Shown here: one piece after another, positions 1,370 to 55,598 of the stretch
How positions within the stretch are numbered: position 1 is the stretch's first letter
How the letters are laid out: every line of letters starts with the position of its first letter
Virus record (IMG/VR): IMGVR_UViG_3300040801_004034
Location: 124,001 to 188,000 of that record
Reading direction: 5' to 3' (one strand)
DNA: 64,000 nt
Program-made: the position numbers and the translations under genes
The notes under the pieces: model-generated
The model's database searches: none
Seen by the model: the letters and a program-made list of their open reading frames with translations, nothing else
Told to the model about the DNA's origin: nothing

Positions 1370-1710
1370 CAATTTTCAAATCCTAGTCGTCTAGAAGCAG
1401 AGGACACCAGCCAGTTCGTGCTGGAAACGATAAGTTGCGATTATCCTAGGACGTTTTAATCCATATAATCTAGGCAAGAGCTTGCAGGCTTATCATTTAG
1501 GTTATATGGCGCCAGATATATAGTAACTGCAATTACAAATATACCTGCGTTGTATCGGTCGGCTGGCGGAGACGCCCTCGTGAAGAGGGAGGTGATTGGT
1601 TCGATTCCAATATACAAATTCGATATTTATACCTATGCAAGTCATGTGTGAGTCATGGGGACGAAACATATAATAAACCACATGTCATGTATATGTTTCA
1701 AATTTTATAA

Positions 1711-1797
1711 GCCTAGGTGGCTCAGTTGGTCGACAGCGCCTGCTTTGTAAGCAGGATCCTACAGGACTCGTGGGTTCGAATCCCACCCTAGGCTCCA
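1711..1797 (+). tRNA. tRNA-Thr(UGU) with long variable arm
   Basis: Cloverleaf, loop TTTGTAA, CCA encoded. Confidence 0.9.
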
Positions 1798-1839
1798 TTT
1801 TGATTGTAGTTTTCGAGTTACGTTTGATTAAGTATTTAT

Positions 1840-2364
1840 ATGATAACATGTATGCAATGCAATAAATTGATTCCTAATCAGGAATCGATAGCTCATAAAT
1901 ATCAAAAACGTTTTTGTGATAGTTCTTGTAGTGCAAAATACAATAACACAAAACGTAAATATAAAAAACAACCAAAAAGCAAGTGTTTGAATTGCGATAA
2001 AGAAACAAAATATAGTACAACGAAGTTTTGTTCGCATCAATGTTCAGGAGATTTTAGAGCAAAACAAGCATATAAAACCAATATCGAAAAATATAAAGCT
2101 GGTGAATTAACAAATCGTAATCGTATATATTCATTTCTTGTTGAAGAATTTGGTAATATATGTAATATATGCCAGTTAGATGGTAACAATTGGAACGGTA
2201 AACCTATCAGATTATGGGTAGATCATATTGATGGGAATGCAACAAATAATTCACCATCGAATTTCAGACTGTTGTGTCCAAATTGCGAATCACAAACTGA
2301 TTTTTGTAGAGGTAAGAATTATGGAAATGGTAGATCATCAAGAGGTCTAAAACCATACGGGTAA
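1840..2364 (+). CDS. HNH homing endonuclease with zinc fingers
   Basis: CxxC repeats; VDHIDGNATNNSPSNFRLLCPNC HNH motif. Confidence 0.85.
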   Translation: MITCMQCNKLIPNQESIAHKYQKRFCDSSCSAKYNNTKRKYKKQPKSKCLNCDKETKYSTTKFCSHQCSGDFRAKQAYKTNIEKYKAGELTNRNRIYSFLVEEFGNICNICQLDGNNWNGKPIRLWVDHIDGNATNNSPSNFRLLCPNCESQTDFCRGKNYGNGRSSRGLKPYG

Positions 2365-2370
2365 TTTAAT

Positions 2371-2445
2371 GGATCTATAATATAACGGCTATTATCACCG
2401 GTTTTTACCCGGCTTATCCGGGTTCAAGTCCCGGTGGATCCACCA
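2371..2445 (+). tRNA. tRNA-Lys(UUU)
   Basis: Cloverleaf, loop TTTTTAC, CCA. Confidence 0.85.
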
Positions 2446-2448
2446 TTT

Positions 2449-2690
2449 AACGTCCCTAGAATCACAGGTATAGGTGCGCCAATGCAAACTATGCGGCATT
2501 GGTCAGTAATGCAATGCACCTTTGATGTAGATTTGCGAGATACGAAGTAGGTGTTGATAGCAGATAGCATAGGCTGTAAACAACACTGAGATAGTTGATC
2601 GTGTAGGAGAATTGCCTAGGAGGGATGACCATCTACAGTTCGAAAGCCGGAAGTCTTGGGTGTTAGGCTTGACAATCGGAGAGACGATAC
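2449..2690 (+). ncRNA. orphan structured RNA, family A copy 1
   Basis: GC-rich, noncoding, paired ends; motifs shared with 16292-16440. Confidence 0.5.
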
Positions 2691-2699
2691 AAATTTAAT

Positions 2700-2776
2700 G
2701 GGCGTGTAGTTCAAGTGGCAGAATACCGGATTTGCAATTCGGAGGTTTGGGATTTCGATTATCCCCACGTCCACCA
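2700..2776 (+). tRNA. tRNA-Ala(UGC)
   Basis: Cloverleaf, G3-U70, CCA. Confidence 0.9.
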
Positions 2777-2896
2777 TCTTAAAAATGATAACAGTATGGT
2801 CAGAACATAGCTATTCTAGATTAACTATGCAATGCACTTGAAGATTAGGACACTTCTTAAGTTATCGATAATGTATATCAGTCCTATACAATTTAT

Positions 2897-3014
2897 GATC
2901 GAGGTCGTTATAATCGACTCACCAAAATAATGTAGAGTACTATATGTTATTGCGGGAAATAAAAGATATGTAATGAGCTATTGCACAGGGGTGAAAATCC
3001 TCCATCGATCACCA
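2897..3014 (+). ncRNA. tRNA-like RNA with acceptor stem, T-arm and CCA but a noncanonical core
   Basis: GATCGA/TCGATC-A-CCA; T-like arm GGGG-TGAAAAT-CCTC. Confidence 0.45.
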
Positions 3015-3020
3015 TTTTAT

Positions 3021-3106
3021 GGGTACCTAAAGCTGTTCGGATACAGTAGCTTGACTGTAAATCAAGTCTCTTCGGGGGAGTGGTTCGAGTCCACAGGTAC
3101 CCACCA
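3021..3106 (+). tRNA. tRNA-Tyr(GUA)
   Basis: Loop CTGTAAA, long variable arm, CCA. Confidence 0.9.
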
Positions 3107-3110
3107 TTTA

Positions 3111-3245
3111 TACATAGTAGCTTAATTGAGTTAGATGATCAAATGAGTCTGTGAGAGGTACCCAAAATCAGATAGTTTGATCATACTGATAAAGCGGCCG
3201 GCTAATAACCGGTATCGTTGTTGGTAGAAATCCAACTATTGTATA
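3111..3245 (+). ncRNA. tRNA-Ile(AAU)-like RNA with about 60-nt hairpin inserted in the D-loop
   Basis: GCTT/AAGC D-stem split by an ATGATCAAA/TTTGATCAT hairpin; GCCGG-CTAATAA-CCGGT arm. Confidence 0.5.
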
Positions 3246-3255
3246 ACAATTTTAT

Positions 3256-3367
3256 GTCGCAATTAGTGTAACGGTTAGCACGCCACCGCAAGGTGAGGAC
3301 AGCAGTTCGATTCTGCAAAGCTTGGAGGTCCTTGAAGGAAGATCGGTTCAAATCCGATAGCGACTCA
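3256..3367 (+). ncRNA. tRNA-like RNA with GNRA-capped anticodon arm and two T-arms
   Basis: CACC-GCAA-GGTG; GCAG-TTCGATT-CTGC and ATCGG-TTCAAAT-CCGAT. Confidence 0.5.
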
Positions 3368-3374
3368 TTTTTAT

Positions 3375-3450
3375 TGTAGGGAGGGATGCTGGTATCCCCG
3401 TGAGTCTCATAAGCTCACTGACGCGGGTTCGATTCCCGCCCCCGCACCCA
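3375..3450 (+). tRNA. tRNA-CAU (Met or Ile2)
   Basis: Loop CTCATAA, CCA. Confidence 0.8.
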
Positions 3451-3558
3451 TTTTACTGAAGGTCGGCACACTGATATGCCAATGCCGTCTGCAGCGGTTA
3501 GTCAAAATTGGTCTCTAACCAGGAGTTGATAAGATCACTTCAGTAACAATTTTATAAT

Positions 3559-3634
3559 GGTCTCATGGTCCAACGGCTTAAGATATTCGACTGTCTCTCG
3601 AATGATGAGGGTTCGATTCCCTCTGGGATCGCCA
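3559..3634 (+). tRNA. tRNA-Asp(GUC)
   Basis: Loop CTGTCTC, G73, CCA. Confidence 0.9.
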
Positions 3635-3639
3635 TTTAA

Positions 3640-3716
3640 TTGACCAGAGGAGAATAGTGAAACTCGTTCGACAGTTTATCGAAAAATAGTGGGTTTGAAT
3701 CCCATTGGTTGAGCCA
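3640..3716 (+). tRNA. degenerate tRNA (Asn GUU-like)
   Basis: Cloverleaf with CCA, but loop CAGTTTA lacks U33 and purine 37. Confidence 0.45.
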
Positions 3717-3723
3717 TTTATAT

Positions 3724-3798
3724 GCCGCTATGTTGTAAAGGATGCATTTCTTCCCTGTCAAGGTTGAGGTACGAGTTCAAATCTCGTTAGTGGCGCCA
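3724..3798 (+). tRNA. tRNA-Asp(GUC), second copy
   Basis: Loop CTGTCAA, G73, CCA; weak anticodon stem. Confidence 0.75.
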
Positions 3799-3799
3799 C

Positions 3800-3916
3800 G
3801 GGTCCTTAGCTCAAATGGTTAGAGCAACCGACTCTTTCAAATTATATGATAATATTTCTATTGTATGATTTGGAATAATCGGTAGGTTGGGAGTTCGATC
3901 CTCCCAGGACCCACCA
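3800..3916 (+). tRNA. tRNA (CAU, or CUU) with 40-nt hairpin insertion in the anticodon loop
   Basis: Perfect tRNA halves; removing 3835-3874 gives ACCGA-CTCATAA-TCGGT. Confidence 0.75.
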
Positions 3917-3961
3917 TTTTCGATATGTTAGGGTACCGATAATATTTGAATAAATATTAAT

Positions 3962-4636
3962 ATGGAATATATTACCATTATTTGCAAAAATTGCGAACAA
4001 GAACATCGATACCCTAAACGTCATTATATTCAAAGACAGAAAACAGGAAGACCGCATAAGATATATTGTTCAAGACATTGTGCTGATATCGGTAAATCGG
4101 TCAAATACGAAAAAAGACATTGTGTTGTATGTAAAGATGAATTTAATTGTAAATCAAATTTAAAAACAAAATGTTGTAGTCGTAAATGTGCTGATAATTT
4201 ACATAATCCTAAAAAGAAATGTGGCAAATGTAAAAAACCTGATTGTAATAATATTACCAGTAATCATCGAAAAGTATTATGTGATATATGTATTGGTGAA
4301 GGTAGATCATATTATAAAGCATATAATTACATGTTACCAGATGAGCTTCCTCTTTATAAAGTTATAAAACAAAGAGGTTCAAATAAATTTGATGTAGTTA
4401 GATCATGGGCTCGTAAAAAAATGATCAACAGTGGTGTAGAATTAAAATGCGATGTTTGTGATTATGATATTCATGTTGAAGCAGCACATATTAAACCTTT
4501 AAGTACATTTTCACCAGATACACTCATTTCAGAAGTTAACTCATTTGATAACTTAAGATTGATGTGCCGTAATCATCATTGGGAGCTTGACCATGGGGTA
4601 TTAAAAGAAAAAATTTCATCGCCGCGAAGCTCTTAG
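3962..4636 (+). CDS. HNH homing endonuclease with zinc fingers
   Basis: CxxC repeats; EAAHIKPL...NLRLMCRNHHWELD. Confidence 0.8.
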   Translation: MEYITIICKNCEQEHRYPKRHYIQRQKTGRPHKIYCSRHCADIGKSVKYEKRHCVVCKDEFNCKSNLKTKCCSRKCADNLHNPKKKCGKCKKPDCNNITSNHRKVLCDICIGEGRSYYKAYNYMLPDELPLYKVIKQRGSNKFDVVRSWARKKMINSGVELKCDVCDYDIHVEAAHIKPLSTFSPDTLISEVNSFDNLRLMCRNHHWELDHGVLKEKISSPRSS

Positions 4637-4709
4637 TAGAGCAGTTGGATTTATATCCCAATGTCTAGATAAGAAACAGGAAGGGGAGCGTAACCCCTCG
4701 CGGCGACCA
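4620..4709 (+). tRNA. atypical tRNA-Ile(UAU)
   Basis: Loop TTTATAT, noncanonical T-loop AGCGTAA, long variable region, CCA. Confidence 0.6.
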
Positions 4710-4733
4710 TTTACATTTTTCAATTTTATATAT

Positions 4734-4826
4734 CGTGGAGTGCCCGAGTTGGTTTAAGGGATCCGGCTTGGAACCGGATGAATTGGCCCGTTGTCTGTTC
4801 CGTGGGTTCGAATCCCACCTCCGCGA
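4734..4826 (+). tRNA. tRNA with Pro anticodon (UGG) on a Ser/Leu-like long-variable-arm body
   Basis: TCCGG-CTTGGAA-CCGGA; C1-G72, A73; 23-nt variable arm; no full CCA. Confidence 0.7.
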
Positions 4827-4836
4827 CATTTTATAT

Positions 4837-4922
4837 GGAGGTTAGCGTCAAGGCGACAAACGGGTGTTGAATACCCGGCCGGGTTTAATAGCTCGAGGGT
4901 TCAATTCCTTTAGCCTCCGCCA
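4837..4922 (+). tRNA. tRNA-Ser(UGA)
   Basis: Long variable arm, G73, CCA. Confidence 0.85.
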
Positions 4923-4932
4923 CTTCCCATCC

Positions 4933-5004
4933 CTGGGAAGCTCATACGGAAGAGCACACGGTCGATAACCGTGAGGTAGTCGGTTCGAATCCGATTACTA
5001 CAGC
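4933..5004 (+). pseudogene. degenerate tRNA-Ile(GAU)
   Basis: D, anticodon and T arms intact; acceptor stem poorly paired; no CCA. Confidence 0.5.
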
Positions 5005-5012
5005 CCTTTCAT

Positions 5013-5089
5013 CCCTAGGTAGCTTAGCGGTTTAAAGCATCCGGTTGATAACCGGAAGACCGAGAGTTCAAATCTCTCCTCAGGGACCA
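5013..5089 (+). tRNA. tRNA-Ile(GAU)
   Basis: Loop TTGATAA, CCA. Confidence 0.85.
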
Positions 5090-5095
5090 CTTTAT

Positions 5096-5180
5096 TCTGA
5101 CGTAGCCGAGCTGGTAGCAGGCGACAGACTGTTAATCTGTAGGAGAAATCCCGTCGGTGGTTCGAGCCCACCCGTCAGAG
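5096..5180 (+). tRNA. tRNA-Asn(GUU) with long variable arm
   Basis: Loop CTGTTAA, GGA-GAAA-TCC variable arm, G73, no CCA. Confidence 0.85.
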
Positions 5181-5191
5181 CTTTATTTTAT

Positions 5192-5269
5192 TCCGTCTGG
5201 GCTGGCATAGTGTTAAGCGGCAGGCTGTTAACCTGTTTAAGTGTGGGGCGGTACCACAAGACGGAGCCA
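5192..5269 (+). tRNA. tRNA-Asn(GUU), atypical T-loop
   Basis: Loop CTGTTAA, T-loop GGCGGTA, CCA. Confidence 0.7.
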
Positions 5270-5361
5270 TTTGCGGTCCCCGGCTTGACTAGAAACGAGC
5301 TCGCAGTCTCTTCCAGGGTCTTCTGCGTTATCAAAAGGATTAAGACCCTACCACTTTATAT

Positions 5362-5437
5362 CTCCTAGCATGCTGTTGGAAGCACAGTGATTCTTACAAA
5401 ATCGCTCTCGTAAGTTCGATTCTTACCTAGGAGACCA
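5362..5437 (+). tRNA. tRNA-Val(UAC), extended anticodon stem
   Basis: Loop CTTACAA, CCA. Confidence 0.7.
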
Positions 5438-5444
5438 TTTTAAC

Positions 5445-5520
5445 GGGAATATGGTGTAACAGGTGCGCACGCTCGACTGAAGATCCTGAGGTTCTGGTTC
5501 GATTCCAGATATTCCCGCCA
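5445..5520 (+). tRNA. tRNA-Phe(GAA)
   Basis: Loop CTGAAGA, CCA. Confidence 0.8.
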
Positions 5521-5606
5521 TTTTAACGTTTAACATGTGAGGAGCATGACTTAATTGGTACGTGAGGAGCATGAACAAATAAACAAATACATGGTCACAA
5601 TTTTAT

Positions 5607-5778
5607 GAGGGGGTATCCTAGTGGTAAGGGACAGACTCTGTCGTATATGAATTAGTTTGGAAGCGTACGGTAGTACATTCTAATTTCATATTATGGCAAC
5701 CTGTTGTTGACGAAAGCAAAACAAAGCGCTTTGTTTTGTGGGAGACGTTGAAGGTTCGATTCCTTTTCCCGCTCGCCA
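5607..5778 (+). ncRNA. tRNA scaffold with the anticodon arm replaced by an about 100-nt multi-hairpin domain
   Basis: Acceptor, D and T arms plus CCA flank a long structured insert. Confidence 0.55.
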
Positions 5779-5934
5779 TTTTTATTCTGACAATGCTAAG
5801 CTGATCTTTTTAAGGGACTGTACTGCTGGTATGATCTGTTACAACTATCGCTTGAAGGTATACATTCTTGCCCTGTGACAAGTTCAACATTGGTCAACGT
5901 GGTAGCTCCTCGTTGTTTACAGATATTTTATAAT

Positions 5935-6011
5935 GCATCACTAGTGTTTAACGGCTAGCACGTGAGTCTTCCAAACTTGAAGTAAGGGTTCAAGTCCCTT
6001 GTGATGCACCA
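5935..6011 (+). tRNA. tRNA-Gly(UCC)
   Basis: Loop CTTCCAA, A73, CCA. Confidence 0.9.
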
Positions 6012-6016
6012 TTTTA

Positions 6017-6126
6017 TTTGTTGTGTATCAACTATCGACGGCAGCCAGTGAGCAGCCGGTTACAATGGGTCACTACCACGTAGCGAAAAGATCGTCACTT
6101 ATATCATAGCTGGTACAACATAACAA
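6017..6126 (+). ncRNA. orphan pseudoknot-like RNA, family B copy 1
   Basis: Motifs shared with 8008-8087. Confidence 0.5.
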
Positions 6127-6131
6127 TAATC

Positions 6132-6203
6132 GCACTGTAGTGTAAGGCTAACACGCTCCAATCAAGAGGGAGTAATTCGGTATAGGACCCGATGGTGCAC
6201 CCA
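6132..6203 (+). pseudogene. degenerate tRNA-like element
   Basis: Acceptor and D arm with CCA; noncanonical T-loop and anticodon loop. Confidence 0.4.
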
Positions 6204-6215
6204 TTTATATTTTAT

Positions 6216-6291
6216 GGCGCCATCGTCTAAAGGTCAGGACAATACCCTTTCAAGGTAGAAATCGAGAGTTCAAGTCTCCGTGGCGTCACCA
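6216..6291 (+). tRNA. tRNA-Glu(UUC)
   Basis: Loop CTTTCAA, CCA. Confidence 0.9.
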
Positions 6292-6297
6292 TTTTAT

Positions 6298-6373
6298 GCC
6301 TCATCGGACTATATAGTAGCGCAGCATTACTGCAGTGATGATGAAATCGGTGTGACTCCGATATGGGGCTCCA
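6298..6373 (+). tRNA. atypical tRNA-Cys(GCA)
   Basis: CTGCAG loop, U73, CCA; noncanonical T-loop. Confidence 0.55.
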
Positions 6374-6669
6374 TTTTACCAGGCAGAAATGTTCACAACG
6401 GAGATACAAGCGCGAATACGATCAATGCGGTGTCCGCTTCACCTGACCTGGTAATTAATTTTATTAACAAACTAAAGTATCCATTACAAATTGGATCAAC
6501 ATTATATCCTAAAGGTACGGTTGTTGAGGTGCTAATGCACAACGATAAACGCATTACAAATGTGTTTCCAAACATGCAACATAACCCTGAATCAACACAA
6601 GTAGCAATCATGCTACCAGGGAGAGAGAAACCAACAATACATGTTGCAAAAGGTAATGAATAATTTTAT

Positions 6670-6746
6670 GGGGATGAAGCTTATTAGGAAAAGCGGCTGG
6701 CTCTTAACCAGTAGTCTTGTCGGTTCGAATCCGATTATCCCTACCA
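6670..6746 (+). tRNA. tRNA-Lys(CUU)
   Basis: Loop CTCTTAA, CCA. Confidence 0.9.
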
Positions 6747-6931
6747 TTTAGTATACTGCTCCTTGCCTTGTAAAGCAAATGGCATCTCCTATGACTAATG
6801 ATACAATACAGCGGTTCGAAACGCAAAATTGGTGACCGATTAGGGATGAATTCCTCCGTGTAGGAAGGAGCTTAAATTTATATAAACTACGGAAAAGTAA
6901 GTAAACCTGCAATGAGAATATAAATATTATC

Positions 6932-7540
6932 ATGAGATATTTCATGTATAAAACAACTAATTTAAAAAATGGTAAAATATACATCGGTGTGCACAGGACC
7001 AAAAATGTAGATGATGGTTATTTAGGTTCAGGTGTTATGATAAAACGTTCAATCCTTAAATATGGTAAACAATGTTTTAAAAAAGAAATATTGCAAGAAT
7101 TTGAGTCGGTATCAGCAATGTATGATGCTGAAAGAAATACAGTTACAACTGAATTTATTAACAGGCCTGATGTTTACAATCTTAGAGTTGGTGGTTGGGG
7201 TGGAAAAATCACTGAACAAACACGCCAAAAAATATCAAAAGCTTTATTAGGAAAGAAAAAAACAGACCAGATGAAAGAAAAACTTAGAAACGCTCGAACA
7301 GGTACAAAATTAAAGGAATCCACAAAAAACAAGATTCAAAATTCGAGAAACGAAAACAAAGACAGTCGAGATCAAATATGGTGTACACTTTTTGATGAAT
7401 GGAAAAATAGCGGTTTGAGTAAAAATGAATTTATAAAAAAAGCAGGTTATCATAGCACAACAACAGCAACATATAATTGGGTTAGGCTAGGATTACAGCC
7501 TGCTAAAGAAAGAATAAAAAGAAAAATTAAGACCTCTTAG
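6932..7540 (+). CDS. GIY-YIG homing endonuclease (Seg-like) with NUMOD3 repeats
   Basis: YKTTNLKNGKIYIGVH...GYLGSG; YNLRVGG. Confidence 0.9.
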   Translation: MRYFMYKTTNLKNGKIYIGVHRTKNVDDGYLGSGVMIKRSILKYGKQCFKKEILQEFESVSAMYDAERNTVTTEFINRPDVYNLRVGGWGGKITEQTRQKISKALLGKKKTDQMKEKLRNARTGTKLKESTKNKIQNSRNENKDSRDQIWCTLFDEWKNSGLSKNEFIKKAGYHSTTTATYNWVRLGLQPAKERIKRKIKTS

Positions 7541-7607
7541 CTCAGAGGACAGAGCAGCAGCCTACGAAGTTGCGTTGTCGGGAGTTCGAATCTCTCAGAG
7601 GTCACCA
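7531..7607 (+). tRNA. tRNA-Arg(ACG)
   Basis: Loop CTACGAA, CCA. Confidence 0.92.
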
Positions 7608-7614
7608 TTTTTAT

Positions 7615-7690
7615 TGTCCCGTGTGTGTAACGGATAGCACGACTGACTTTGAATCAGTAGGTCCAGGTTCGATTCCTGGTGGAGCTGCCA
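7615..7690 (+). tRNA. tRNA-Gln(UUG)
   Basis: Loop CTTTGAA, CCA; weak acceptor stem. Confidence 0.7.
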
Positions 7691-7695
7691 TTTAT

Positions 7696-7787
7696 TGCAG
7701 GGTAGTGTAATCCGGTAACATGTCGGGCTCATAACCCGAAGAAGCACTTCGAGTGTGTTGTAGGTTCAAATCCTTCCCCTGCCTCCA
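7696..7787 (+). tRNA. initiator tRNA-fMet(CAU) with long variable arm
   Basis: GGG/CCC anticodon stem, 1-72 mismatch, GCAC-TTCGA-GTGT arm, CCA. Confidence 0.85.
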
Positions 7788-7862
7788 TTTTCTGATATTG
7801 TAATATTGACGTGTTACAATTGATGTATGATTGCCATATGGATAATAGCTGCGTCAACAGTT

Positions 7863-7946
7863 ATATGAAGTATCGCTGATATAGTGTAATTGGTAACACA
7901 GCCTCCTAACACGAGGCGGATATAGGTTCGAGTCCTGTTTTCATAT
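7863..7946 (+). ncRNA. tRNA-Val(AAC)-like domain embedded in a larger RNA
   Basis: GCCTC-CTAACAC-GAGGC arm, normal D and T arms, extra hairpin before the D arm. Confidence 0.45.
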
Positions 7947-8007
7947 TGCAATCGTTAATTTATAGATAATTGATACGGAGTAGTTGAACGAAAAAGTATC
8001 ATTTATT

Positions 8008-50489: not shown

Positions 50490-51326
50490 TCAATCATGGT
50501 CTTCGAGATCGATGTAAATTTTGTCGTTGAACCATGACCAATCTTGTTTAAAGACTGGCGTCTCGTTATCAATGTACCATTTTGTTCTGACAGGTACCTC
50601 ACCGATTTTAATATCTGGATGCATATCAGGAAATGCTACTGTTTCAAATTTCTTATAACAAGACGAACCATGCTGTTTGGTAACTGGTAGTTCATACCAA
50701 TCAGCGTCATCATCTTCATTTGACATTAACATCTCTTTAAGCTTAGCTGTATTCTTACCTTGTAACTCTTTATGTGAGTAATAAGCTCGAGCTTGCATCT
50801 GAACACTGTTTTTTGCAGCATCTTGCATTCTCCACCACAAGCAGTTTAAAACTTCATAACGTTGTGATAGTGGAAACACACGAGCATCGAATTGAGCTTG
50901 TTTCATTACCATTGCATCAGCTACAGCAGTTTCATCTAACTGATTACCATAATCAGGTGTTATAGCACGAACCATTCGCAACTGATTAAACTTACTTGTT
51001 GCAAGACTTGCAGCAACACTTGTGATCTTTTGGATGTTTCCGCCAAACCAGATATCAGCTTCACGGCTCATCAGGTCAGTAAACACGATTGTGATATCAT
51101 CTGATTGTGTATAACCAAACTGCGCACCCTGGATATTCTCACAAAGAAACTTCATCGTCTCTTGCATATCTTCGATCATACCTTCATCGAATGGTCGATC
51201 CAACCCTTTTGTATAGGTATGAAATGCTTTACCATCGATGCGTAGCACGTAATATTGTTTTGGTGAAAGATATGTACGAGTGATATTCTCGTAACCTTTC
51301 ATGCGATCTCCTAATTCATCACTCAT
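50490..51326 (-). CDS. Thg1-like tRNA-His guanylyltransferase (3'-5' polymerase)
   Basis: RIDGKAFH, YTQSDDI, FDARVF and WRMQDA. Confidence 0.9.
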   Translation of the reverse strand: MSDELGDRMKGYENITRTYLSPKQYYVLRIDGKAFHTYTKGLDRPFDEGMIEDMQETMKFLCENIQGAQFGYTQSDDITIVFTDLMSREADIWFGGNIQKITSVAASLATSKFNQLRMVRAITPDYGNQLDETAVADAMVMKQAQFDARVFPLSQRYEVLNCLWWRMQDAAKNSVQMQARAYYSHKELQGKNTAKLKEMLMSNEDDDADWYELPVTKQHGSSCYKKFETVAFPDMHPDIKIGEVPVRTKWYIDNETPVFKQDWSWFNDKIYIDLEDHD

Positions 51327-51489: not shown

Positions 51490-51906
51490 TTACAGCTTAA
51501 TGTTATTGAGGATCTTCTCCTTTTGCTTTGCAACTACCTCAGCAGGTACCCCATGTACGTTTTCACTCCCATGCAAGTTCTGAACAACATAGCTCACAAC
51601 TACATAACCATGCTTTTCAGCAAGTTCGATATACGGCTTACGTTCTTTACCTGTTGTATTGGTGTTGTCAACAATGATACATGCAGTTCTTTTCAACATA
51701 TTCAGCTCGACCTGATCTTTGCACCAAGCATGAGCTTGGCCGAGTTTACTCGGATCGAAATCATAACCATCACCCCAGAATAAATCAGCACTACATATTT
51801 CACAATCTGGGTGCAAAGTTTCGATGAACTTGCTAAAGGTAGACTTACCGCTGCCTGACGCTCCGACAGGCAGGATAAGTACTTTGTTTTGAATTAATGG
51901 ATTCAT
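51490..51906 (-). CDS. AAA_33 polynucleotide kinase-like protein
   Basis: GASGSGKST, VDNTNT and NVHGVP. Confidence 0.85.
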   Translation of the reverse strand: MNPLIQNKVLILPVGASGSGKSTFSKFIETLHPDCEICSADLFWGDGYDFDPSKLGQAHAWCKDQVELNMLKRTACIIVDNTNTTGKERKPYIELAEKHGYVVVSYVVQNLHGSENVHGVPAEVVAKQKEKILNNIKL

Positions 51907-52352: not shown

Positions 52353-53135
52353 TTATATTACTGTTGTTCCTTTTTTACATCTACCTTTGAACCACCCGTT
52401 TGGTATTTCAGTTTTGGTTAAATCAACTTGTTTCATTGTTACACCATTGGTAATCCAATTTGTTCCTTTCTTCGCTTCACTCATTCTTTTTCTTGTACTA
52501 GTCTTTTTTGCAATACCTTTCTGTTTTATGCTTATTTTACGTTTAACATCATCAGGACGCTGTTTACCATAATGACCATTATTCGCGCCTTTATTTTTAC
52601 CTTTCATGCTTTGTGAGATTTTTCTACAATGATCTTTAGAAAATTTCTTGCCTTTGTTAGTACCGGTTCGACCAATATTTGTTTCACTTATTCTTTTTTT
52701 ATGTCTTTCAGTCATTCCTCTCACCCAACCTTCAGGTATATTTTTCAGTTTACACCATTTTTCATTATTACCATCGTTTATTAATACTAAACCATCACGT
52801 GCATGTTTCATACTTTCTCGCCATCGAACCCTGTAATACTCAAACATTCTTGATGATGTAATACGACCTACACCGTTAATACCAGTTTTAAAAAAAGATA
52901 AAGCGGATAGAGCTCTTAACATTTTATAATACTCAACAGAGCCTTTTATTTGCATTTTTACTAGTAGTAAATGCGCAATAAAATGTTCTCTCGGAGATAA
53001 TAAAACTATATTACTATGTTTATTATCTCCACCAATACTTTTTGGTATAATATGATGTCTTTCAGCATGGCATGATGTTGATGGATCTGATTTGCGTTTT
53101 TTGACAAGTGATTTGTAAACAGTATGATAATTCAT
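52353..53135 (-). CDS. HNH homing endonuclease with NUMOD3 repeats
   Basis: ERHHIIPKSIGG...LSPREHFIAH. Confidence 0.9.
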   Translation of the reverse strand: MNYHTVYKSLVKKRKSDPSTSCHAERHHIIPKSIGGDNKHSNIVLLSPREHFIAHLLLVKMQIKGSVEYYKMLRALSALSFFKTGINGVGRITSSRMFEYYRVRWRESMKHARDGLVLINDGNNEKWCKLKNIPEGWVRGMTERHKKRISETNIGRTGTNKGKKFSKDHCRKISQSMKGKNKGANNGHYGKQRPDDVKRKISIKQKGIAKKTSTRKRMSEAKKGTNWITNGVTMKQVDLTKTEIPNGWFKGRCKKGTTVI

Positions 53136-53149
53136 ACTATTATTTATAT

Positions 53150-54160
53150 TCAGCTTTCGGTATACTGGTAATTGATCGTTTTGAAGCTTAGATCTTTGTT
53201 AAGTCGTTCACTATAAAGATGATTGCGAAGTCTCCATACAAGCCCTTCAGCAGTTGCACCATTAGCATACTTCACTTTCTTCGCTTCTTCGACAAGATCA
53301 TCAGCTGTTTCCCATTTGAATGGACCTTCATAGTAAAGATCAACCATAGGAATACCAAGCGTAGTGCAGATTTGAACTGATTCATTCCAGTCGCAAAGAA
53401 TACGACGATCAAGCTTCCAAACATTGAACACCCGGGCGTCAACACCTTTAAGCTTTTCTGGATTCTTTTGAATACCTTCACCTACAAGCTCCAACTGGAG
53501 ACCAATACCCACAGGTAGCTTCTCTTTAAGGTTGTACTTGAATACAGGTTGCCAATATTTGCTGTTTCCTGATTCTTTGATTTCGAGATTACGAGAGCAA
53601 ACTTTGAAACCGTCTTCGGCATGATTAACGATAGTTACAGAACTACCATCATGCTTAACAGTTGCAACAACATCTCGCCCTTTCATCATTTCGATAATAT
53701 CAGGCATATTCTCAAGACGTTCTTCATCGGTCTTTGGTACAAGATGTGTCGGAAACGACCCAGCTACGTCACCACTTTCATACGATACAGGTTTTTCGTA
53801 TTTCTCAACACCGAGATATTCACCCACATCAGTATCAATCAAATCATTCGGGTCGACATCATAATAGCTTGCTGGGAGATATTTCATAAGCTCACCAAGA
53901 GGCATAATTAGTCCATTGCTGTATTCACCACGAAGCTTGATAATATTAATCCTGAACTTCTTATTTTCTAGGAAGCTGAATTCTGGTTTATCTTTCGGCG
54001 CAATAGTATCGACCGGGATATAAACGACGAGATCATCCACTTTGAAATCAACTGCGCTAATTACACGCCAGCTGAGACCATACATCTTAAAGATGGTGAG
54101 TGAATCTGCATTTGGATGCTCAATAACATCCGAGATTTTTTGTATTGTTGCTAGTTTCAT
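53150..54160 (-). CDS. RNA ligase (DRB0094/Rnl2-like family)
   Basis: LATIQKI..HPNADSL, KHDGSS, ELVGEG and EGLVW. Confidence 0.9.
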   Translation of the reverse strand: MKLATIQKISDVIEHPNADSLTIFKMYGLSWRVISAVDFKVDDLVVYIPVDTIAPKDKPEFSFLENKKFRINIIKLRGEYSNGLIMPLGELMKYLPASYYDVDPNDLIDTDVGEYLGVEKYEKPVSYESGDVAGSFPTHLVPKTDEERLENMPDIIEMMKGRDVVATVKHDGSSVTIVNHAEDGFKVCSRNLEIKESGNSKYWQPVFKYNLKEKLPVGIGLQLELVGEGIQKNPEKLKGVDARVFNVWKLDRRILCDWNESVQICTTLGIPMVDLYYEGPFKWETADDLVEEAKKVKYANGATAEGLVWRLRNHLYSERLNKDLSFKTINYQYTES

Positions 54161-54500: not shown

Positions 54501-55598
54501 TTACTTTTCATCCAATACTGATTTGATTATTTTTTTGATTGTTTGGTTTGGTATTTCCATTCCTTTACGTTTCTTAAATGCAACATCTTTCCATGGATTT
54601 CTGTACGTCATTTGCATTAAGAACGCAAAATCCTTATCCGAAAGATTTTTGTGCATTTGTGCATATTCATCGATTTTGTTGATTGAAACATCAACAGATT
54701 TTTTAACTTCATCTAGATTTTGAACAAGTTCCTCAACCATGCACCAGCATTCATAATCAAATGTGTTTTTGATATATTTTTTAAATGCTTTGAATGATGG
54801 AAAATCCTGATCAGCATAAAGATTAAGAATATTCTTTTCAGTTGCATTTGATTTAAACGAATGTAACTTGAGATACTCTGCTGATTTTACTTTCCATAAA
54901 TCATTACCTTGGTATATGACACAACCTTCAATACCAGATGCTTTTTCGATCGTAGATAGAAGTTCGCTCAGGTCATTGAACTCATATTTCTTCGGACGTG
55001 GCACAAGCATCTCCATTGCAAATGAATCAAGCATTACCTGAGATTCTAGCTCGTATGTATTCTTGTTAATTGCTCCGATCAGATACAAATCGATTTCGGG
55101 GTAGTCCAAAACAATCCGCTGATTAGGTGTTACAATTTCGAAAAGTAATGATAAATGAGTATGGTTCTGCATCCAAGGACGGATGTTATAGTACTTGTCA
55201 AGAGCAACATCGAAATCAGCGCTATTGTCTAAAGTAACGTAGCTTTCAGTACCTCTGGTACGAACGTTGAACATGTTCTCACATGCATCGACAATCATTA
55301 ACGAGCCATCCTCTTTAGATACAATTCTCGAATCTAACAGATCAGTTGGAGGCGGAAAGTTACCAGGGTTTTCACCAAAATTAACGAACTTAGGAAAGCC
55401 GCAGCTTAAGGGCTGAAAATCTGACTTACGGTAAATAAGTGAGCGTAAAAATTTATTTTCCTGCGTCCATTCGACACTAGGCAGACCTGGAGTAATTAAA
55501 CATGCCTCATCGCCAAAGAATGTAATATCTCTTTGTATAAATTCCTCGATTGGTACACTTTTGAGTGCAGCCTCTACGCGTTTTTGTGCTAAGTTCAT
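54501..55598 (-). CDS. RNA ligase (T4 Rnl1-like)
   Basis: FPKFVNFGE, KEDGSL, EGCVI and KVKSAEY. Confidence 0.85.
   Translation of the reverse strand: MNLAQKRVEAALKSVPIEEFIQRDITFFGDEACLITPGLPSVEWTQENKFLRSLIYRKSDFQPLSCGFPKFVNFGENPGNFPPPTDLLDSRIVSKEDGSLMIVDACENMFNVRTRGTESYVTLDNSADFDVALDKYYNIRPWMQNHTHLSLLFEIVTPNQRIVLDYPEIDLYLIGAINKNTYELESQVMLDSFAMEMLVPRPKKYEFNDLSELLSTIEKASGIEGCVIYQGNDLWKVKSAEYLKLHSFKSNATEKNILNLYADQDFPSFKAFKKYIKNTFDYECWCMVEELVQNLDEVKKSVDVSINKIDEYAQMHKNLSDKDFAFLMQMTYRNPWKDVAFKKRKGMEIPNQTIKKIIKSVLDEK

What the first reader, a model, noticed from the sequence alone, without database searches (positions are those of the whole stretch)
3800..3916. tRNA with a 40-nt hairpin intron-like insert in the anticodon
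An otherwise perfect tRNA has an insert forming a 13-bp hairpin (TTTCAAATTATAT/GTATGATTTGGAA). Excising 3835-3874 restores CAU; excising 3837-3876 gives CUU, but a Lys(CUU) already exists at 6670. The insert is too small for a group I intron. The genome encodes two RNA ligases, a kinase and phosphoesterases, so protein-dependent splicing, or activation by a host anticodon nuclease, is plausible (inference).
Basis: partly seen in the sequence, partly recalled or inferred. Interest (0 to 1): 0.7.

Follow-up and report, generated by a model that had tools for sequence, protein, structure and literature searches.

The report
Hairpin-split phage tRNA beside homing endonuclease
A virus of bacteria carries a well-formed tRNA gene whose anticodon is split by a 40-base hairpin; this is most likely the footprint of the selfish DNA-cutting enzyme gene next door, not a proven intron, and whether the RNA is ever mended into a working tRNA is unknown.

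Summary
Window 3800-3916 is a high-scoring tRNA (Rfam 56.5 bits) with exactly 40 extra bases (3835-3874) between C34 and A35. The extra bases form a 17-bp hairpin (z about -5.5).

Uninterrupted homologues in the T4-like phages Vibrio nt-1 and Aeromonas AS-zj fix the mature loop as CUCAUAA, so this is a tRNA-Ile2/Met type.

The insert is not a group I intron and not an archaeal bulge-helix-bulge intron. No splicing endonuclease or RtcB is encoded. RNA libraries from the source sample do not cover the gene.

New evidence points to homing endonucleases:
- An HNH gene starts 46 nt downstream.
- In Aeromonas phage P19 an HNH gene sits inside the same tRNA at the same position.
- About nine other viral or metagenomic tRNAs have unrelated hairpins at this site. 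Half of them abut HNH or GIY-YIG genes.
- No bacterial genome scanned has such a tRNA.

Best reading (confidence about 0.5): an insert that splits an endonuclease target, as the T4 gene 60 insert does for mobA. Splicing is unproven, although the phage encodes Rnl1-like and DraRnl-like ligases, a kinase and a phosphoesterase.

The parts
3800..3834 (+). tRNA 5' part: acceptor strand, D arm, 5' strand of the anticodon stem, and loop bases C32 U33 C34
   Evidence: Rfam tRNA 56.5 bits. Fold. 82% identical over the body to the tRNA(CAU) of Vibrio phage nt-1.
3835..3874 (+). 40-nt insert between C34 and A35. 17.5% G+C, single copy in the genome.
   Evidence: Boundaries come from uninterrupted homologues. 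ARAGORN -i reports a 40-nt intron. No other copy in the genome. G+C.
3835..3875 (+). Hairpin: 17-bp helix (3835-3851 / 3859-3875) with a 7-nt loop (3852-3858). The last pair uses A35, the first base of the 3' tRNA part.
   Evidence: Minimum-free-energy and centroid structures agree, z about -5.5. Insert alone z -4.9.
3875..3916 (+). tRNA 3' part: A35 U36 A37 A38, 3' strand of the anticodon stem, variable loop AGGUU, T arm, acceptor strand, A73, encoded CCA
   Evidence: The variable loop and anticodon stem are identical to those of the nt-1 tRNA(CAU).
3962..4636 (+). Free-standing HNH homing endonuclease gene (224 aa), 46 nt downstream of the tRNA. Its end overlaps the next predicted tRNA.
   Evidence: Pfam HNH_2 at 7.5e-7, above the cut-off. 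PHROG 1271, HNH endonuclease. Only two distant homologues among 5.8 billion proteins; one lies in a phage tRNA cluster.
3724..3798 (+). tRNA-Asp(GUC), ending 1 nt before the interrupted tRNA. RNase P cleavage at the 5' end of the interrupted tRNA would release the 3' end of tRNA-Asp (inference).
   Evidence: ARAGORN and Rfam.
54501..55598 (-). T4 Rnl1 (gp63)-like RNA ligase. A possible sealing enzyme only if the insert is cut out.
   Evidence: PHROG 562 at 8.4e-37. Matches T4 RNA ligase 1 structure 2C5U at E 1e-8.
53150..54160 (-). DraRnl-type (OB fold plus nucleotidyltransferase) RNA ligase
   Evidence: Pfam RNA_ligase 1.6e-18 plus the PHA02142 OB domain. TIGR02306 at 1.3e-38 but 132.7 bits, below that model's curated cut-off of 151.15 bits, so the type assignment is tentative.
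51490..51906 (-). AAA_33 / polynucleotide-kinase-like P-loop kinase
   Evidence: PF13671 at 39.4 bits. PHROG 2071 and, weakly, PHROG 505 polynucleotide kinase.
50490..51326 (-). Thg1-like 3'-5' nucleotidyltransferase (tRNA 5'-end repair family)
   Evidence: Pfam Thg1 at 3.7e-27.
56456..57265 (-). Calcineurin-like phosphoesterase. A possible end-healing enzyme.
   Evidence: Pfam Metallophos at 1.3e-10.

Best explanation
The 40-bp hairpin is a DNA insertion that splits a homing-endonuclease target in the anticodon-loop region of a tRNA(CAU) gene, probably tRNA-Ile2.

The tRNA, its insert and the HNH gene 46 nt downstream form one selfish cassette. The proposed cycle, all inferred, is:
1. The endonuclease nicks or cuts uninterrupted tRNA(CAU) genes of co-infecting phages.
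2. Repair copies the cassette into the cut genome.
3. The insert keeps the carrier genome from being cut itself.

This is the logic of the T4 gene 60 50-nt insert with mobA, and of 'collaborative homing'.

The transcript would be a tRNA-shaped RNA with a roughly 26-bp extended anticodon arm. It cannot decode unless the insert is removed. A self-contained hairpin is the least harmful kind of insert: the tRNA body still folds, so RNase P and RNase Z can still process the tightly packed array (inference).

Shown: the anatomy, the exact insertion point, the adjacent HNH gene, an HNH gene at the same point in phage P19, and the recurrence of such inserts next to homing endonucleases. Inferred: the target of the HNH, the protection from cutting, the mobility, and the fate of the RNA.
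For: (1) Adjacent endonuclease. An HNH gene lies 46 nt downstream.

(2) Same site in a cultured phage. In Aeromonas phage P19 the homologous tRNA has the same anticodon stem and variable loop. It is interrupted at the identical point (after C34) by 515 nt: a 15-nt leader plus a 167-aa HNH gene, whose stop codon is U36 A37 A38. That leaves no room for a ribozyme. Its sister phage AS-zj has an intact tRNA(CAU) at the same locus. The blastn match between the window and P19 runs 6 nt into the insert.

(3) Siblings. A pattern scan found other complete tRNAs with unrelated hairpin inserts at this place. Most inserts fold far better than shuffles. Homing endonuclease genes lie within 100 nt of the window's tRNA, L222, L231, L224 and the Asn tRNA of G005. 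These are HNH PHROG 2255 three times and GIY-YIG PHROG 314 once. L292 has one about 0.5 kb away, of the same PHROG as the P19 enzyme. That is 5 of 10, against a base rate of 7 of 41 tRNAs in this window's own endonuclease-rich array (p about 0.02).

(4) Foreign-looking tRNA. The interrupted tRNA is a canonical bacterial-style tRNA among aberrant native tRNAs. It is at most 68% identical to any other tRNA of the genome, but 82% to the nt-1 tRNA. In G005 the interrupted Asn tRNA and a plain, very different Asn tRNA flank the HNH gene. This fits co-conversion with the endonuclease.

(5) Viral only. None of 185,579 species genomes has such a tRNA, apart from one archaeon. tRNA-Ile2 is essential in bacteria, so there the insert would be lethal if unspliced.

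(6) No known splicing route.

(7) Precedents in the literature. Free-standing endonucleases sit in T4 tRNA clusters (SegB). Endonuclease insertions split genes. The gene 60 insert protects against MobA (PMC2988022; bioRxiv 10.1101/2022.08.31.505936).
Against: - No close relative of this phage is available, so presence or absence of the insert at this locus could not be compared. The nearest DNA polymerase is 45% identical, and that phage has no interrupted tRNA.
- The target of the HNH is unknown. The window's HNH is not detectably related to the P19 enzyme.
- Four of the ten siblings show no endonuclease nearby. The statistic rests on ten loci and a single control array.
- A pure DNA-level model does not require a hairpin. 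Yet the hairpin is strong and recurrent, and the first three pairs at the junction (U:A35, U:A, U:R) recur in 5 of 10 inserts. This hints at a constraint at the RNA level.
- The tRNA shows no decay, although gene conversion or a recent insertion could explain that.
- One sibling (L255) sits beside a tRNA-lysidine synthetase gene, and G005 carries three interrupted tRNAs. Both suggest such tRNAs are used.
- The flanks CTC and ATAA were imposed by my search pattern.
Confidence: 0.5

Rival explanations
1. A true protein-dependent intron. An unidentified endoribonuclease, from host or phage, cuts after C34 and before A35. The phage kinase and phosphoesterase heal the ends, and the Rnl1-like ligase seals the anticodon loop. 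The product is a working tRNA-Ile2/Met(CAU). This can coexist with the homing-endonuclease explanation: the insert would then be the tRNA counterpart of the gene 60 bypass.
For: - The tRNA body is flawless and has an encoded CCA.
- The hairpin brings the two junctions together, and hairpins of unrelated sequence recur at the site.
- A junction motif is shared.
- The phage encodes an Rnl1-like ligase, which in T4 seals anticodon-loop breaks (established knowledge). It also encodes a second ligase, a kinase, a phosphoesterase and a Thg1-like enzyme in one neighbourhood.
- AUA is a frequent codon, 23 per 1000.
- Sibling L255 abuts a TilS gene.
- G005 has three interrupted tRNAs.
Against: - No endonuclease candidate exists. 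There is no bulge-helix-bulge motif, and no splicing endonuclease, RtcB or RNase III gene here; the siblings lack a splicing endonuclease and RtcB.
- RNase III geometry (2-nt 3' overhangs) would remove 39 or 41 nt from this helix, not 40 (inference from the pairing).
- Repair genes do not track the siblings and are common in T4-like phages anyway.
- Phage P19 tolerates an endonuclease gene at the same point with no ribozyme.
- No bacterial genome has such a tRNA.
- There is no RNA evidence.
Confidence: 0.27
2. A dead tRNA gene. A chance insertion, unrelated to any endonuclease, inactivated a dispensable phage tRNA recently. The hairpin has no role.
For: - Phage tRNAs are dispensable, and the array has three other CAU tRNAs and a predicted UAU tRNA.
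- The insert is single-copy.
- The closest relative lacks it.
Against: - The hairpin is far beyond chance (z -5.5).
- The same site is hit repeatedly in unrelated tRNAs, with hairpins, and by an endonuclease gene in P19.
- The endonuclease adjacency is enriched.
- No decay is seen anywhere else in the tRNA.
Confidence: 0.1
3. An unspliced functional RNA. It would be a tRNA-shaped molecule with a long double-stranded arm that serves as a decoy or scaffold, for example for a host anticodon nuclease, a modification enzyme or a Ro-like protein, or as an RNase III processing site that separates the array transcript from the HNH mRNA.
For: - tRNA mimics with a replaced anticodon arm exist (bacterial Y RNA-like YrlA; established knowledge).
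- Another class of insert-bearing tRNAs in viral contigs sits next to DUF2828/vWA proteins.
- The arm plus anticodon stem approaches the length of an RNase III substrate.
Against: - This genome has no TROVE or DUF2828 protein.
- The hairpin sequence is not conserved among siblings.
- No Rfam family other than tRNA matches meaningfully.
- No partner protein has been identified.
Confidence: 0.1
4. An assembly or sequencing artefact.
For: It is a metagenome-assembled genome, and the palindrome is AT-rich.
Against: Independent Logan assemblies of four runs bridge the insert with no differences. Similar inserts occur in unrelated assemblies.
Confidence: 0.02

Closest known systems
T4 gene 60 50-nt insert plus the mobA HNH cassette (Bonocora et al. 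2011, recalled from memory; summarised in bioRxiv 10.1101/2022.08.31.505936 and PMC2988022)
   Same: A short hairpin-containing insert (about 40-50 nt) sits in a conserved gene of a T4-like phage, next to a free-standing HNH homing endonuclease gene. In T4 the insert blocks cutting of the carrier genome, and the pair moves as a cassette. Variants exist where the endonuclease or the insert has been lost.
   Different: Here the host gene is a tRNA, not a protein gene, so ribosomal bypass cannot rescue it. No rescue mechanism is known. Neither the target nor the protective effect has been tested. The HNH families are different.
Collaborative homing: endonuclease-less group I intron in cyanophage psbA plus the adjacent free-standing F-CphI (Zeng et al. 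2009, recalled from memory; concept in PMC2988022)
   Same: An intervening sequence splits the target of a neighbouring free-standing endonuclease.
   Different: There the intervening sequence is a self-splicing ribozyme of more than 200 nt. Here it is a 40-nt hairpin with no catalytic core.
Homing endonuclease genes that split host genes or sit in tRNA clusters: T4 SegB between tRNA genes, mobE in Aeh1 nrdA (PMC2988022)
   Same: The setting is a T4-like phage tRNA array densely populated with HNH and GIY-YIG genes; there are five in window 1800-17800. In phage P19 an HNH gene lies inside the same tRNA.
   Different: SegB lies between tRNA genes. An insert within the anticodon of a tRNA gene was not found in any paper I could search.
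Archaeal and eukaryotic tRNA introns (bulge-helix-bulge motif, EndA plus RtcB or Trl1)
   Same: A short intron in the anticodon loop, a hairpin that pairs with anticodon-loop bases, and a requirement for protein enzymes.
   Different: The position is 34/35, not 37/38. The structure is a 3x3 internal loop rather than two 3-nt bulges 4 bp apart. The host is bacterial (tmRNA and GOLLD RNA are in the same array). There is no EndA or RtcB gene.
Bacterial group I introns in tRNA anticodon loops, e.g. Azoarcus tRNA-Ile(CAU)
   Same: A tRNA(CAU) gene is interrupted in its anticodon loop, and the link to homing endonucleases is shared.
   Different: The insert is 40 nt against about 200 nt or more. There is no P1-P9 core and no Rfam intron match. 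The 5' exon ends in C, not U.
rRNA intervening sequences removed by RNase III without re-ligation
   Same: An extended AT-rich hairpin is inserted into a conserved stable-RNA helix.
   Different: Fragmented rRNA still works. A tRNA cut in its anticodon does not.

Membership tests
tRNA (Rfam RF00005) | Cloverleaf with conserved D and T loops, scoring above the 29-bit gathering threshold | tested here: met
   56.5 bits over model positions 1-71, with extra bases in the anticodon loop only.
tRNA(CAU), Ile2 or Met type | After removal of the insert, the loop is CUCAUAA and the body is closest to CAU tRNAs | tested here: met
   The nt-1 and AS-zj tRNAs share the stem ACCGA/UCGGU and the loop CTCATAA. 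Identity is 63/77 and 61/77, against 54-58/77 for phage tRNA-Lys. The interrupted P19 allele occupies the locus of an intact CAU tRNA. Ile2 versus Met is not resolved, and a CUU reading is not fully excluded.
Archaeal/eukaryotic protein-spliced tRNA intron | Bulge-helix-bulge motif (two 3-nt bulges separated by 4 bp) at the splice sites | tested here: not met
   The minimum-free-energy and centroid structures give a symmetric 3x3 internal loop directly followed by a 17-bp helix. No alternative bulge-helix-bulge pairing was found by inspection.
Archaeal/eukaryotic protein-spliced tRNA intron | A splicing endonuclease (PF01974) and an RtcB-type ligase are available | tested here: not met
   Neither is in this genome or in five sibling phage records. 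The host genome is unknown, and bacteria are not known to have EndA.
Group I intron | A ribozyme core of about 200 nt or more, U at the 5' splice site, G at the intron's 3' end | tested here: not met
   The insert is 40 nt. No intron family matches in Rfam at E up to 10. The exon ends in C34 and the insert ends in A.
Homing-endonuclease cassette with a target-splitting insert (gene 60/mobA type) | A free-standing homing endonuclease gene lies immediately beside the interrupted gene | tested here: met
   An HNH_2 ORF at 3962-4636, 46 nt downstream.
Homing-endonuclease cassette with a target-splitting insert (gene 60/mobA type) | The same site is polymorphic among related genomes: empty, insert, or endonuclease | tested here: inconclusive
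   Met across T4-like phages: nt-1 and AS-zj empty, P19 with an HNH gene, the window with a hairpin. For this phage's own lineage no close relative exists.
Homing-endonuclease cassette with a target-splitting insert (gene 60/mobA type) | The endonuclease cuts the uninterrupted allele, and the insert blocks cutting | not testable with these tools
   This needs an enzyme assay.
Repeated palindromic mobile element (REP/MITE type) | Several copies in the genome | tested here: not met
   Only the one copy. Other matches are chance words of 13 nt or fewer. The host genome was not available.
Y RNA-like tRNA mimic (YrlA with Ro/TROVE-like protein) | A Ro-like (TROVE or DUF2828-vWA) partner gene, and a match to the YrlA model | tested here: not met
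   No TROVE or DUF2828 in the genome. No YrlA match at 3780-3940.

The most novel reading that the evidence does not exclude
The hairpin inserts at position 34/35 of phage tRNAs are a new class of bacterial-virus tRNA intron. An as yet unknown endoribonuclease would recognise the motif 'anticodon stem, 3x3 loop, hairpin'. The exons would then be rejoined by the phage heal-and-seal set: kinase, phosphoesterase and Rnl1-like ligase. Homing endonucleases could then colonise tRNA genes without killing them. This would be the tRNA counterpart of the gene 60 ribosomal bypass, and the first protein-dependent tRNA splicing in the bacterial world.
Probability: 0.25. Interest if true: 0.9.

Novelty: new variant of a known kind. 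Interest (0 to 1): 0.62.

Why it matters
If the endonuclease link holds, tRNA anticodon loops join the list of conserved targets that homing endonucleases colonise. Short hairpin inserts then become a recognisable signature of such cassettes. That explains 'intron-containing' tRNAs which annotation tools miss or mislabel in large phages.

It also poses a sharp, testable question. T4 rescues gene 60 by ribosomal bypass. Is there an equivalent rescue for a tRNA? The obvious candidate is excision followed by the phage's Rnl1-type ligase, whose only known natural job is to reseal anticodon loops. A positive answer would be the first protein-dependent tRNA splicing in bacteria or their viruses.

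Aeromonas phage P19 is cultured and has an HNH gene at the same site, so the question can be tested experimentally.

Tried and rejected
- **Void scan.** My pattern had one N too many and did not match the window itself. Its zero result is void. It was redone correctly.
- **RNA evidence.** Three metatranscriptome runs of the source sample hold no contig over 3800-3916, so they are uninformative.
- **Close relatives.** Exact 26-mer and 23-mer scans of the exons found no near-identical tRNA in viral or metagenome collections. INPHARED has no similar DNA. The nearest phages have only 45% DNA polymerase identity.
- **HNH homologues.** Only two distant ones were found. One lies in a tRNA cluster and none lies inside a tRNA.
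- **Bulge-helix-bulge, group I intron, terminator, repeated element.** All rejected (see the membership tests).
- **RNase III excision.** The 2-nt stagger gives 39- or 41-nt products in this helix, leaving 8- or 6-nt loops (inference).
- **Fold-back (snap-back) repair as the origin of the palindrome.** Neither arm copies the flanking tRNA sequence.
- **Phage TilS.** The PP-loop hit is QueC.
- **Repair genes tracking the siblings.** Thg1 and RNA ligase are not consistently present, and several contigs are incomplete.
- **The 489-aa ORF inside the array (12495-13964).** It has no family match and is unrelated to the DUF2828 proteins.
- **Lys(CUU) reading.** It is less well supported than CAU but cannot be excluded for some siblings. 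The four loci L246, L271, L279 and L285 proved to be eukaryote-type tRNA-Lys with ordinary 37/38 introns.
- **Literature.** Four searches found no report of short hairpin inserts in phage tRNAs.

Full report
**Setting.** The window is bases 124001-188000 of a 221,292-bp viral contig with 35.5% G+C, rated complete by CheckV. It was assembled from a microbial-mat metagenome. PHROG matches to DNA polymerase, tail sheath, baseplate wedge and the SbcC-like gp46 make it a T4-like myovirus. Its closest relatives in IMG/VR share only 45% DNA polymerase identity. Window 1500-19500 is one long array on the + strand. It holds about 40 tRNAs, a tmRNA and a GOLLD RNA, so the host is bacterial. Five homing endonuclease genes, of HNH and GIY-YIG types, are interspersed in the array.

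Rfam's tRNA model matches 3800-3913 at 56.5 bits, one of the better scores in the array. All extra bases sit in one block in the anticodon loop. Default ARAGORN and Rfam's default filters miss the gene. ARAGORN with introns allowed reports a 40-nt intron.

The RNA folds as a cloverleaf. Its anticodon stem (3827-31/3879-83) is followed by a 3x3 internal loop (CUC/UAA) and then a 17-bp helix (3835-51/3859-75; 13 Watson-Crick pairs and 4 G.U) capped by a 7-nt loop. The z-score is -5.5, and none of 200 shuffles is as stable. The insert is single-copy in the genome. It is present unchanged in contigs that another assembler built from four DNA runs of the same sample, and no insert-less form was seen.

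**Which tRNA, and where exactly is the insert?** Several excision frames give a 7-nt loop: AAU, CAU or CUU. Uninterrupted homologues decide between them. Vibrio phage nt-1 and Aeromonas phage AS-zj, both T4-like Straboviridae, carry tRNAs with the same anticodon stem. In nt-1 the variable loop is also the same. Both have the loop CTCATAA. With the insert removed as CAU, the window tRNA is 63/77 identical to nt-1 and 61/77 to AS-zj. It is 54-58/77 identical to phage tRNA-Lys, and at most 68% identical to any other tRNA of its own genome. Against CTCATAA the insert is exactly 3835-3874, between C34 and A35, with no positional ambiguity. The AS-zj tRNA has the acceptor stem I recall for E. coli ileX (from memory), and one sibling abuts a lysidine synthetase gene. 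tRNA-Ile2 is therefore likely, but Met is not excluded. AUA is a common codon in this phage, at 23 per 1000.

**What it is not.**
- It is not a group I intron. It has 40 nt, no Rfam intron match, and the exon ends in C.
- It is not an archaeal-type intron. There is no bulge-helix-bulge motif, the position is 34/35, and no splicing endonuclease or RtcB is encoded here or in five sibling phage records.
- It is not a repeated palindromic element.
- No RNase III is encoded. By the pairing geometry, RNase III-type staggered cuts would remove 39 or 41 nt rather than 40 (inference).

**The new lead: homing endonucleases.** An HNH gene (Pfam HNH_2, PHROG 1271) starts 46 nt after the tRNA.

The best blastn match of the tRNA's 5' part among cultured phages is Aeromonas phage P19. 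There the homologous tRNA is interrupted at the identical point. After ...ACCGACTC come a 15-nt leader with a ribosome-binding site and a 167-aa HNH gene (HNH_3, PHROG 14913). The stop codon of that gene is U36 A37 A38 of the tRNA. The 3' part of the tRNA follows. The 515-nt insertion is almost entirely coding, so no ribozyme fits.

The sister phage AS-zj has an intact tRNA(CAU) at the same locus, after tRNA-Gly. The P19 arrangement therefore looks like a classic endonuclease invasion of a tRNA gene. The match between P19 and the window continues 6 nt into the insert, TTTAAA against TTTCAA.

**Siblings.** I scanned with a pattern that demands a D arm, CTC, 25-55 extra bases, ATAA and a T arm. 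It returned 6 viral loci, 113 metagenomic stretches (80 held as loci) and 45 stretches in species genomes. Most hits are plain tRNAs with chance downstream matches, or tandem genes.

Eight independent loci are complete tRNAs, with intact anticodon stems, that carry a 30-45-nt insert: L220, L221 (identical to L225), L222, L224, L226, L231, L260 and L292. Acceptor stems are intact in all but L260, which has 3 of 7 pairs. With the window they make nine inserts. The inserts are unrelated in sequence, but most fold far better than shuffles (z -3.8 to -4.9 for five of nine). L222 and L231 show the same architecture as the window: a 3x3 loop CUC/UAA followed by a hairpin whose first pair uses A35. 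Three further loci (L223, L255, L286) have 48-52-nt inserts that contain a T-arm-like hairpin.

In the species-genome collection the only real case is a DPANN archaeon. No bacterial chromosome has such a tRNA.

**Endonuclease genes next to the siblings.**
- L222: HNH, PHROG 2255, 4 nt from the tRNA.
- L231: HNH of the same PHROGs, abutting the tRNA.
- L224: GIY-YIG, PHROG 314, 77 nt away.
- L292: HNH, PHROG 14913 (the P19 family), about 0.5 kb away.
- Sources.

The 296-kb phage that holds L222 (G005, which also has a tmRNA) carries at least two more interrupted tRNAs. One is a canonical-looking tRNA-Asn(GUU) with a 51-nt insert near position 34/35. It lies 1 nt from another PHROG 2255 HNH gene. 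On the far side of that gene sits a plain tRNA-Asn of very different sequence.

Counting tRNAs within 100 nt of an endonuclease gene gives 5 of 10 interrupted tRNAs. The rate is 7 of 41 for all tRNAs in this window's own endonuclease-rich array (p 0.017; 0.034 without the window). The sample is small and the flanks were fixed by my pattern, so I treat this as suggestive.

**Best explanation.** The pattern is that of the T4 gene 60/mobA cassette and of collaborative homing. A short insert splits the target of a neighbouring free-standing endonuclease, protects the carrier genome, and travels with the endonuclease (PMC2988022; bioRxiv 10.1101/2022.08.31.505936).

This reading explains four things:
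- why the interrupted tRNA looks foreign to its array (co-conversion);
- why it shows no decay (gene conversion with target genes, or a recent arrival);
- why such tRNAs are confined to viruses;
- why an endonuclease gene can occupy the same point in P19.

The hairpin itself is not required by the DNA-level model. My inference is that a self-contained hairpin is the least disruptive insert. The tRNA body still folds, so RNase P cleavage at its 5' end, 1 nt after tRNA-Asp, and processing of the rest of the array are preserved.

**Is the RNA mended?** This is unknown.

For splicing:
- The hairpin recurs, and the junction motif recurs. Five of ten inserts start UUU and end RA, so that U:A35, U:A and U:R pairs form (p about 2e-5). 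Some of these tRNAs could instead be Lys(CUU) genes in which UU is the anticodon.
- A TilS gene lies beside L255.
- One phage holds three interrupted tRNAs.
- This phage has a full heal-and-seal set in window 50.5-57.3 kb: a Thg1-like enzyme, an AAA_33/PNK-like kinase, a DraRnl-type ligase, a T4 Rnl1-like ligase (PHROG 562; 2C5U at E 1e-8) and a metallophosphoesterase.

Against splicing:
- There is no endonuclease candidate.
- The repair genes do not track the siblings.
- P19 tolerates the disruption.
- There is no RNA evidence.

I put splicing at about one in four. It is compatible with the cassette model, not an alternative to it.

**Verdict.** The feature is real. I have reinterpreted it as a member of a small, apparently undescribed family of hairpin inserts in phage tRNA anticodon loops that are linked to homing endonucleases. 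It is a new variant of a known kind of selfish cassette. There is an open, testable possibility of a new tRNA repair or splicing route.

Noticed in passing
IMG/VR loci L103, L105, L116, L135 (10274-10386 and 10535-10648), L139, L140, L141, L149, L152, L158, L164, L170, L178: A second, sequence-conserved class of insert-bearing tRNAs. The insert is about 40 nt, placed after the third pair of the 5' strand of the anticodon stem, and consists of a variable hairpin plus the motif ACAGCAA. In 7 of 8 loci tested, the neighbouring gene encodes a 485-545-aa DUF2828 + DUF7788/vWA protein. From memory this protein family is Ro60/TROVE-like, and Rfam gives a weak YrlA match. They may therefore be phage Y-RNA-like tRNA mimics rather than introns.
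   Followed up: partly
IMG/VR loci L106, L107, L136, L151 (two tRNAs), L154, L169; metagenome locus L258: A third class of long inserts in tRNA anticodon arms, sharing a GTTACTT motif near the 3' end.
   Followed up: no
L223 (identical to L239), L255, L286; G005 tRNA-Asn at L390 9597-9722 (-): Inserts of 48-52 nt in the anticodon loop that themselves contain a T-arm-like hairpin (GGGTTCGATTCCC type). L255 lies beside a tRNA-lysidine synthetase N-domain gene (TIGR02432, 123.8 bits).
   Followed up: partly
Aeromonas phage P19, OM339718.1 188890-189460 (L342): A cultured T4-like phage has an HNH homing endonuclease gene inserted directly in the anticodon of a tRNA(CAU) gene, with the stop codon formed by U36 A37 A38. 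The record does not annotate the split tRNA.
   Followed up: yes
window 1711-1797, 4734-4827, 5096-5181, 7696-7787, 11506-11591, 4620-4709: tRNAs for Thr, Pro, Asn, Met, Val and Ile(UAU) carry long variable arms (86-94 nt in total), although they are not Leu, Ser or Tyr. Similar long Ile(UAU) tRNAs, next to a Met(CAU) tRNA, occur in G002 and L392, and in G005 both next to a Met(CAU) tRNA and next to the interrupted CAU tRNA.
   Followed up: no
window 14150-14226: A tRNA with anticodon CUA, which ARAGORN labels 'Pyl'. It is a potential amber suppressor and hints at TAG recoding in part of the genome.
   Followed up: no
window 19025-19472 and 16670-17019: A GOLLD RNA (179 bits) with a tRNA-like element embedded at 19094-19167, and a phage tmRNA with tag GENQLMAA, both in the same array. 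The sibling phage G005 also has a tmRNA.
   Followed up: no
window 3641-3720, 4939-4995, 6216-6288: Further tRNA-like genes that ARAGORN misses. Two are Rfam-only matches (35 and 47 bits). A cloverleaf-like stretch between the two Asp tRNAs, with a 7-bp acceptor stem and the loop CAGTTTA, was seen by eye.
   Followed up: no
window 1840-2364, 3962-4636, 6932-7540, 10861-11520, 17040-17771, 52353-53135: Six homing-endonuclease-like ORFs (HNH, NUMOD3, GIY-YIG). Five are inside the tRNA array. One lies between the kinase and the RNA ligase of the repair cluster.
   Followed up: partly
genome C1:66214-69399 (L388): QueC (7-cyano-7-deazaguanine synthase) lies next to a SegE-like GIY-YIG gene and a RecA/UvsX-like gene. 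This suggests deazaguanine modification of DNA or tRNA.
   Followed up: no
L226 212-910 (-), and G004 C1:46158-46526: Thg1-like genes occur next to one sibling interrupted tRNA (L226) and elsewhere in another sibling's genome (G004), as well as in the window's genome. The trend is not consistent.
   Followed up: partly
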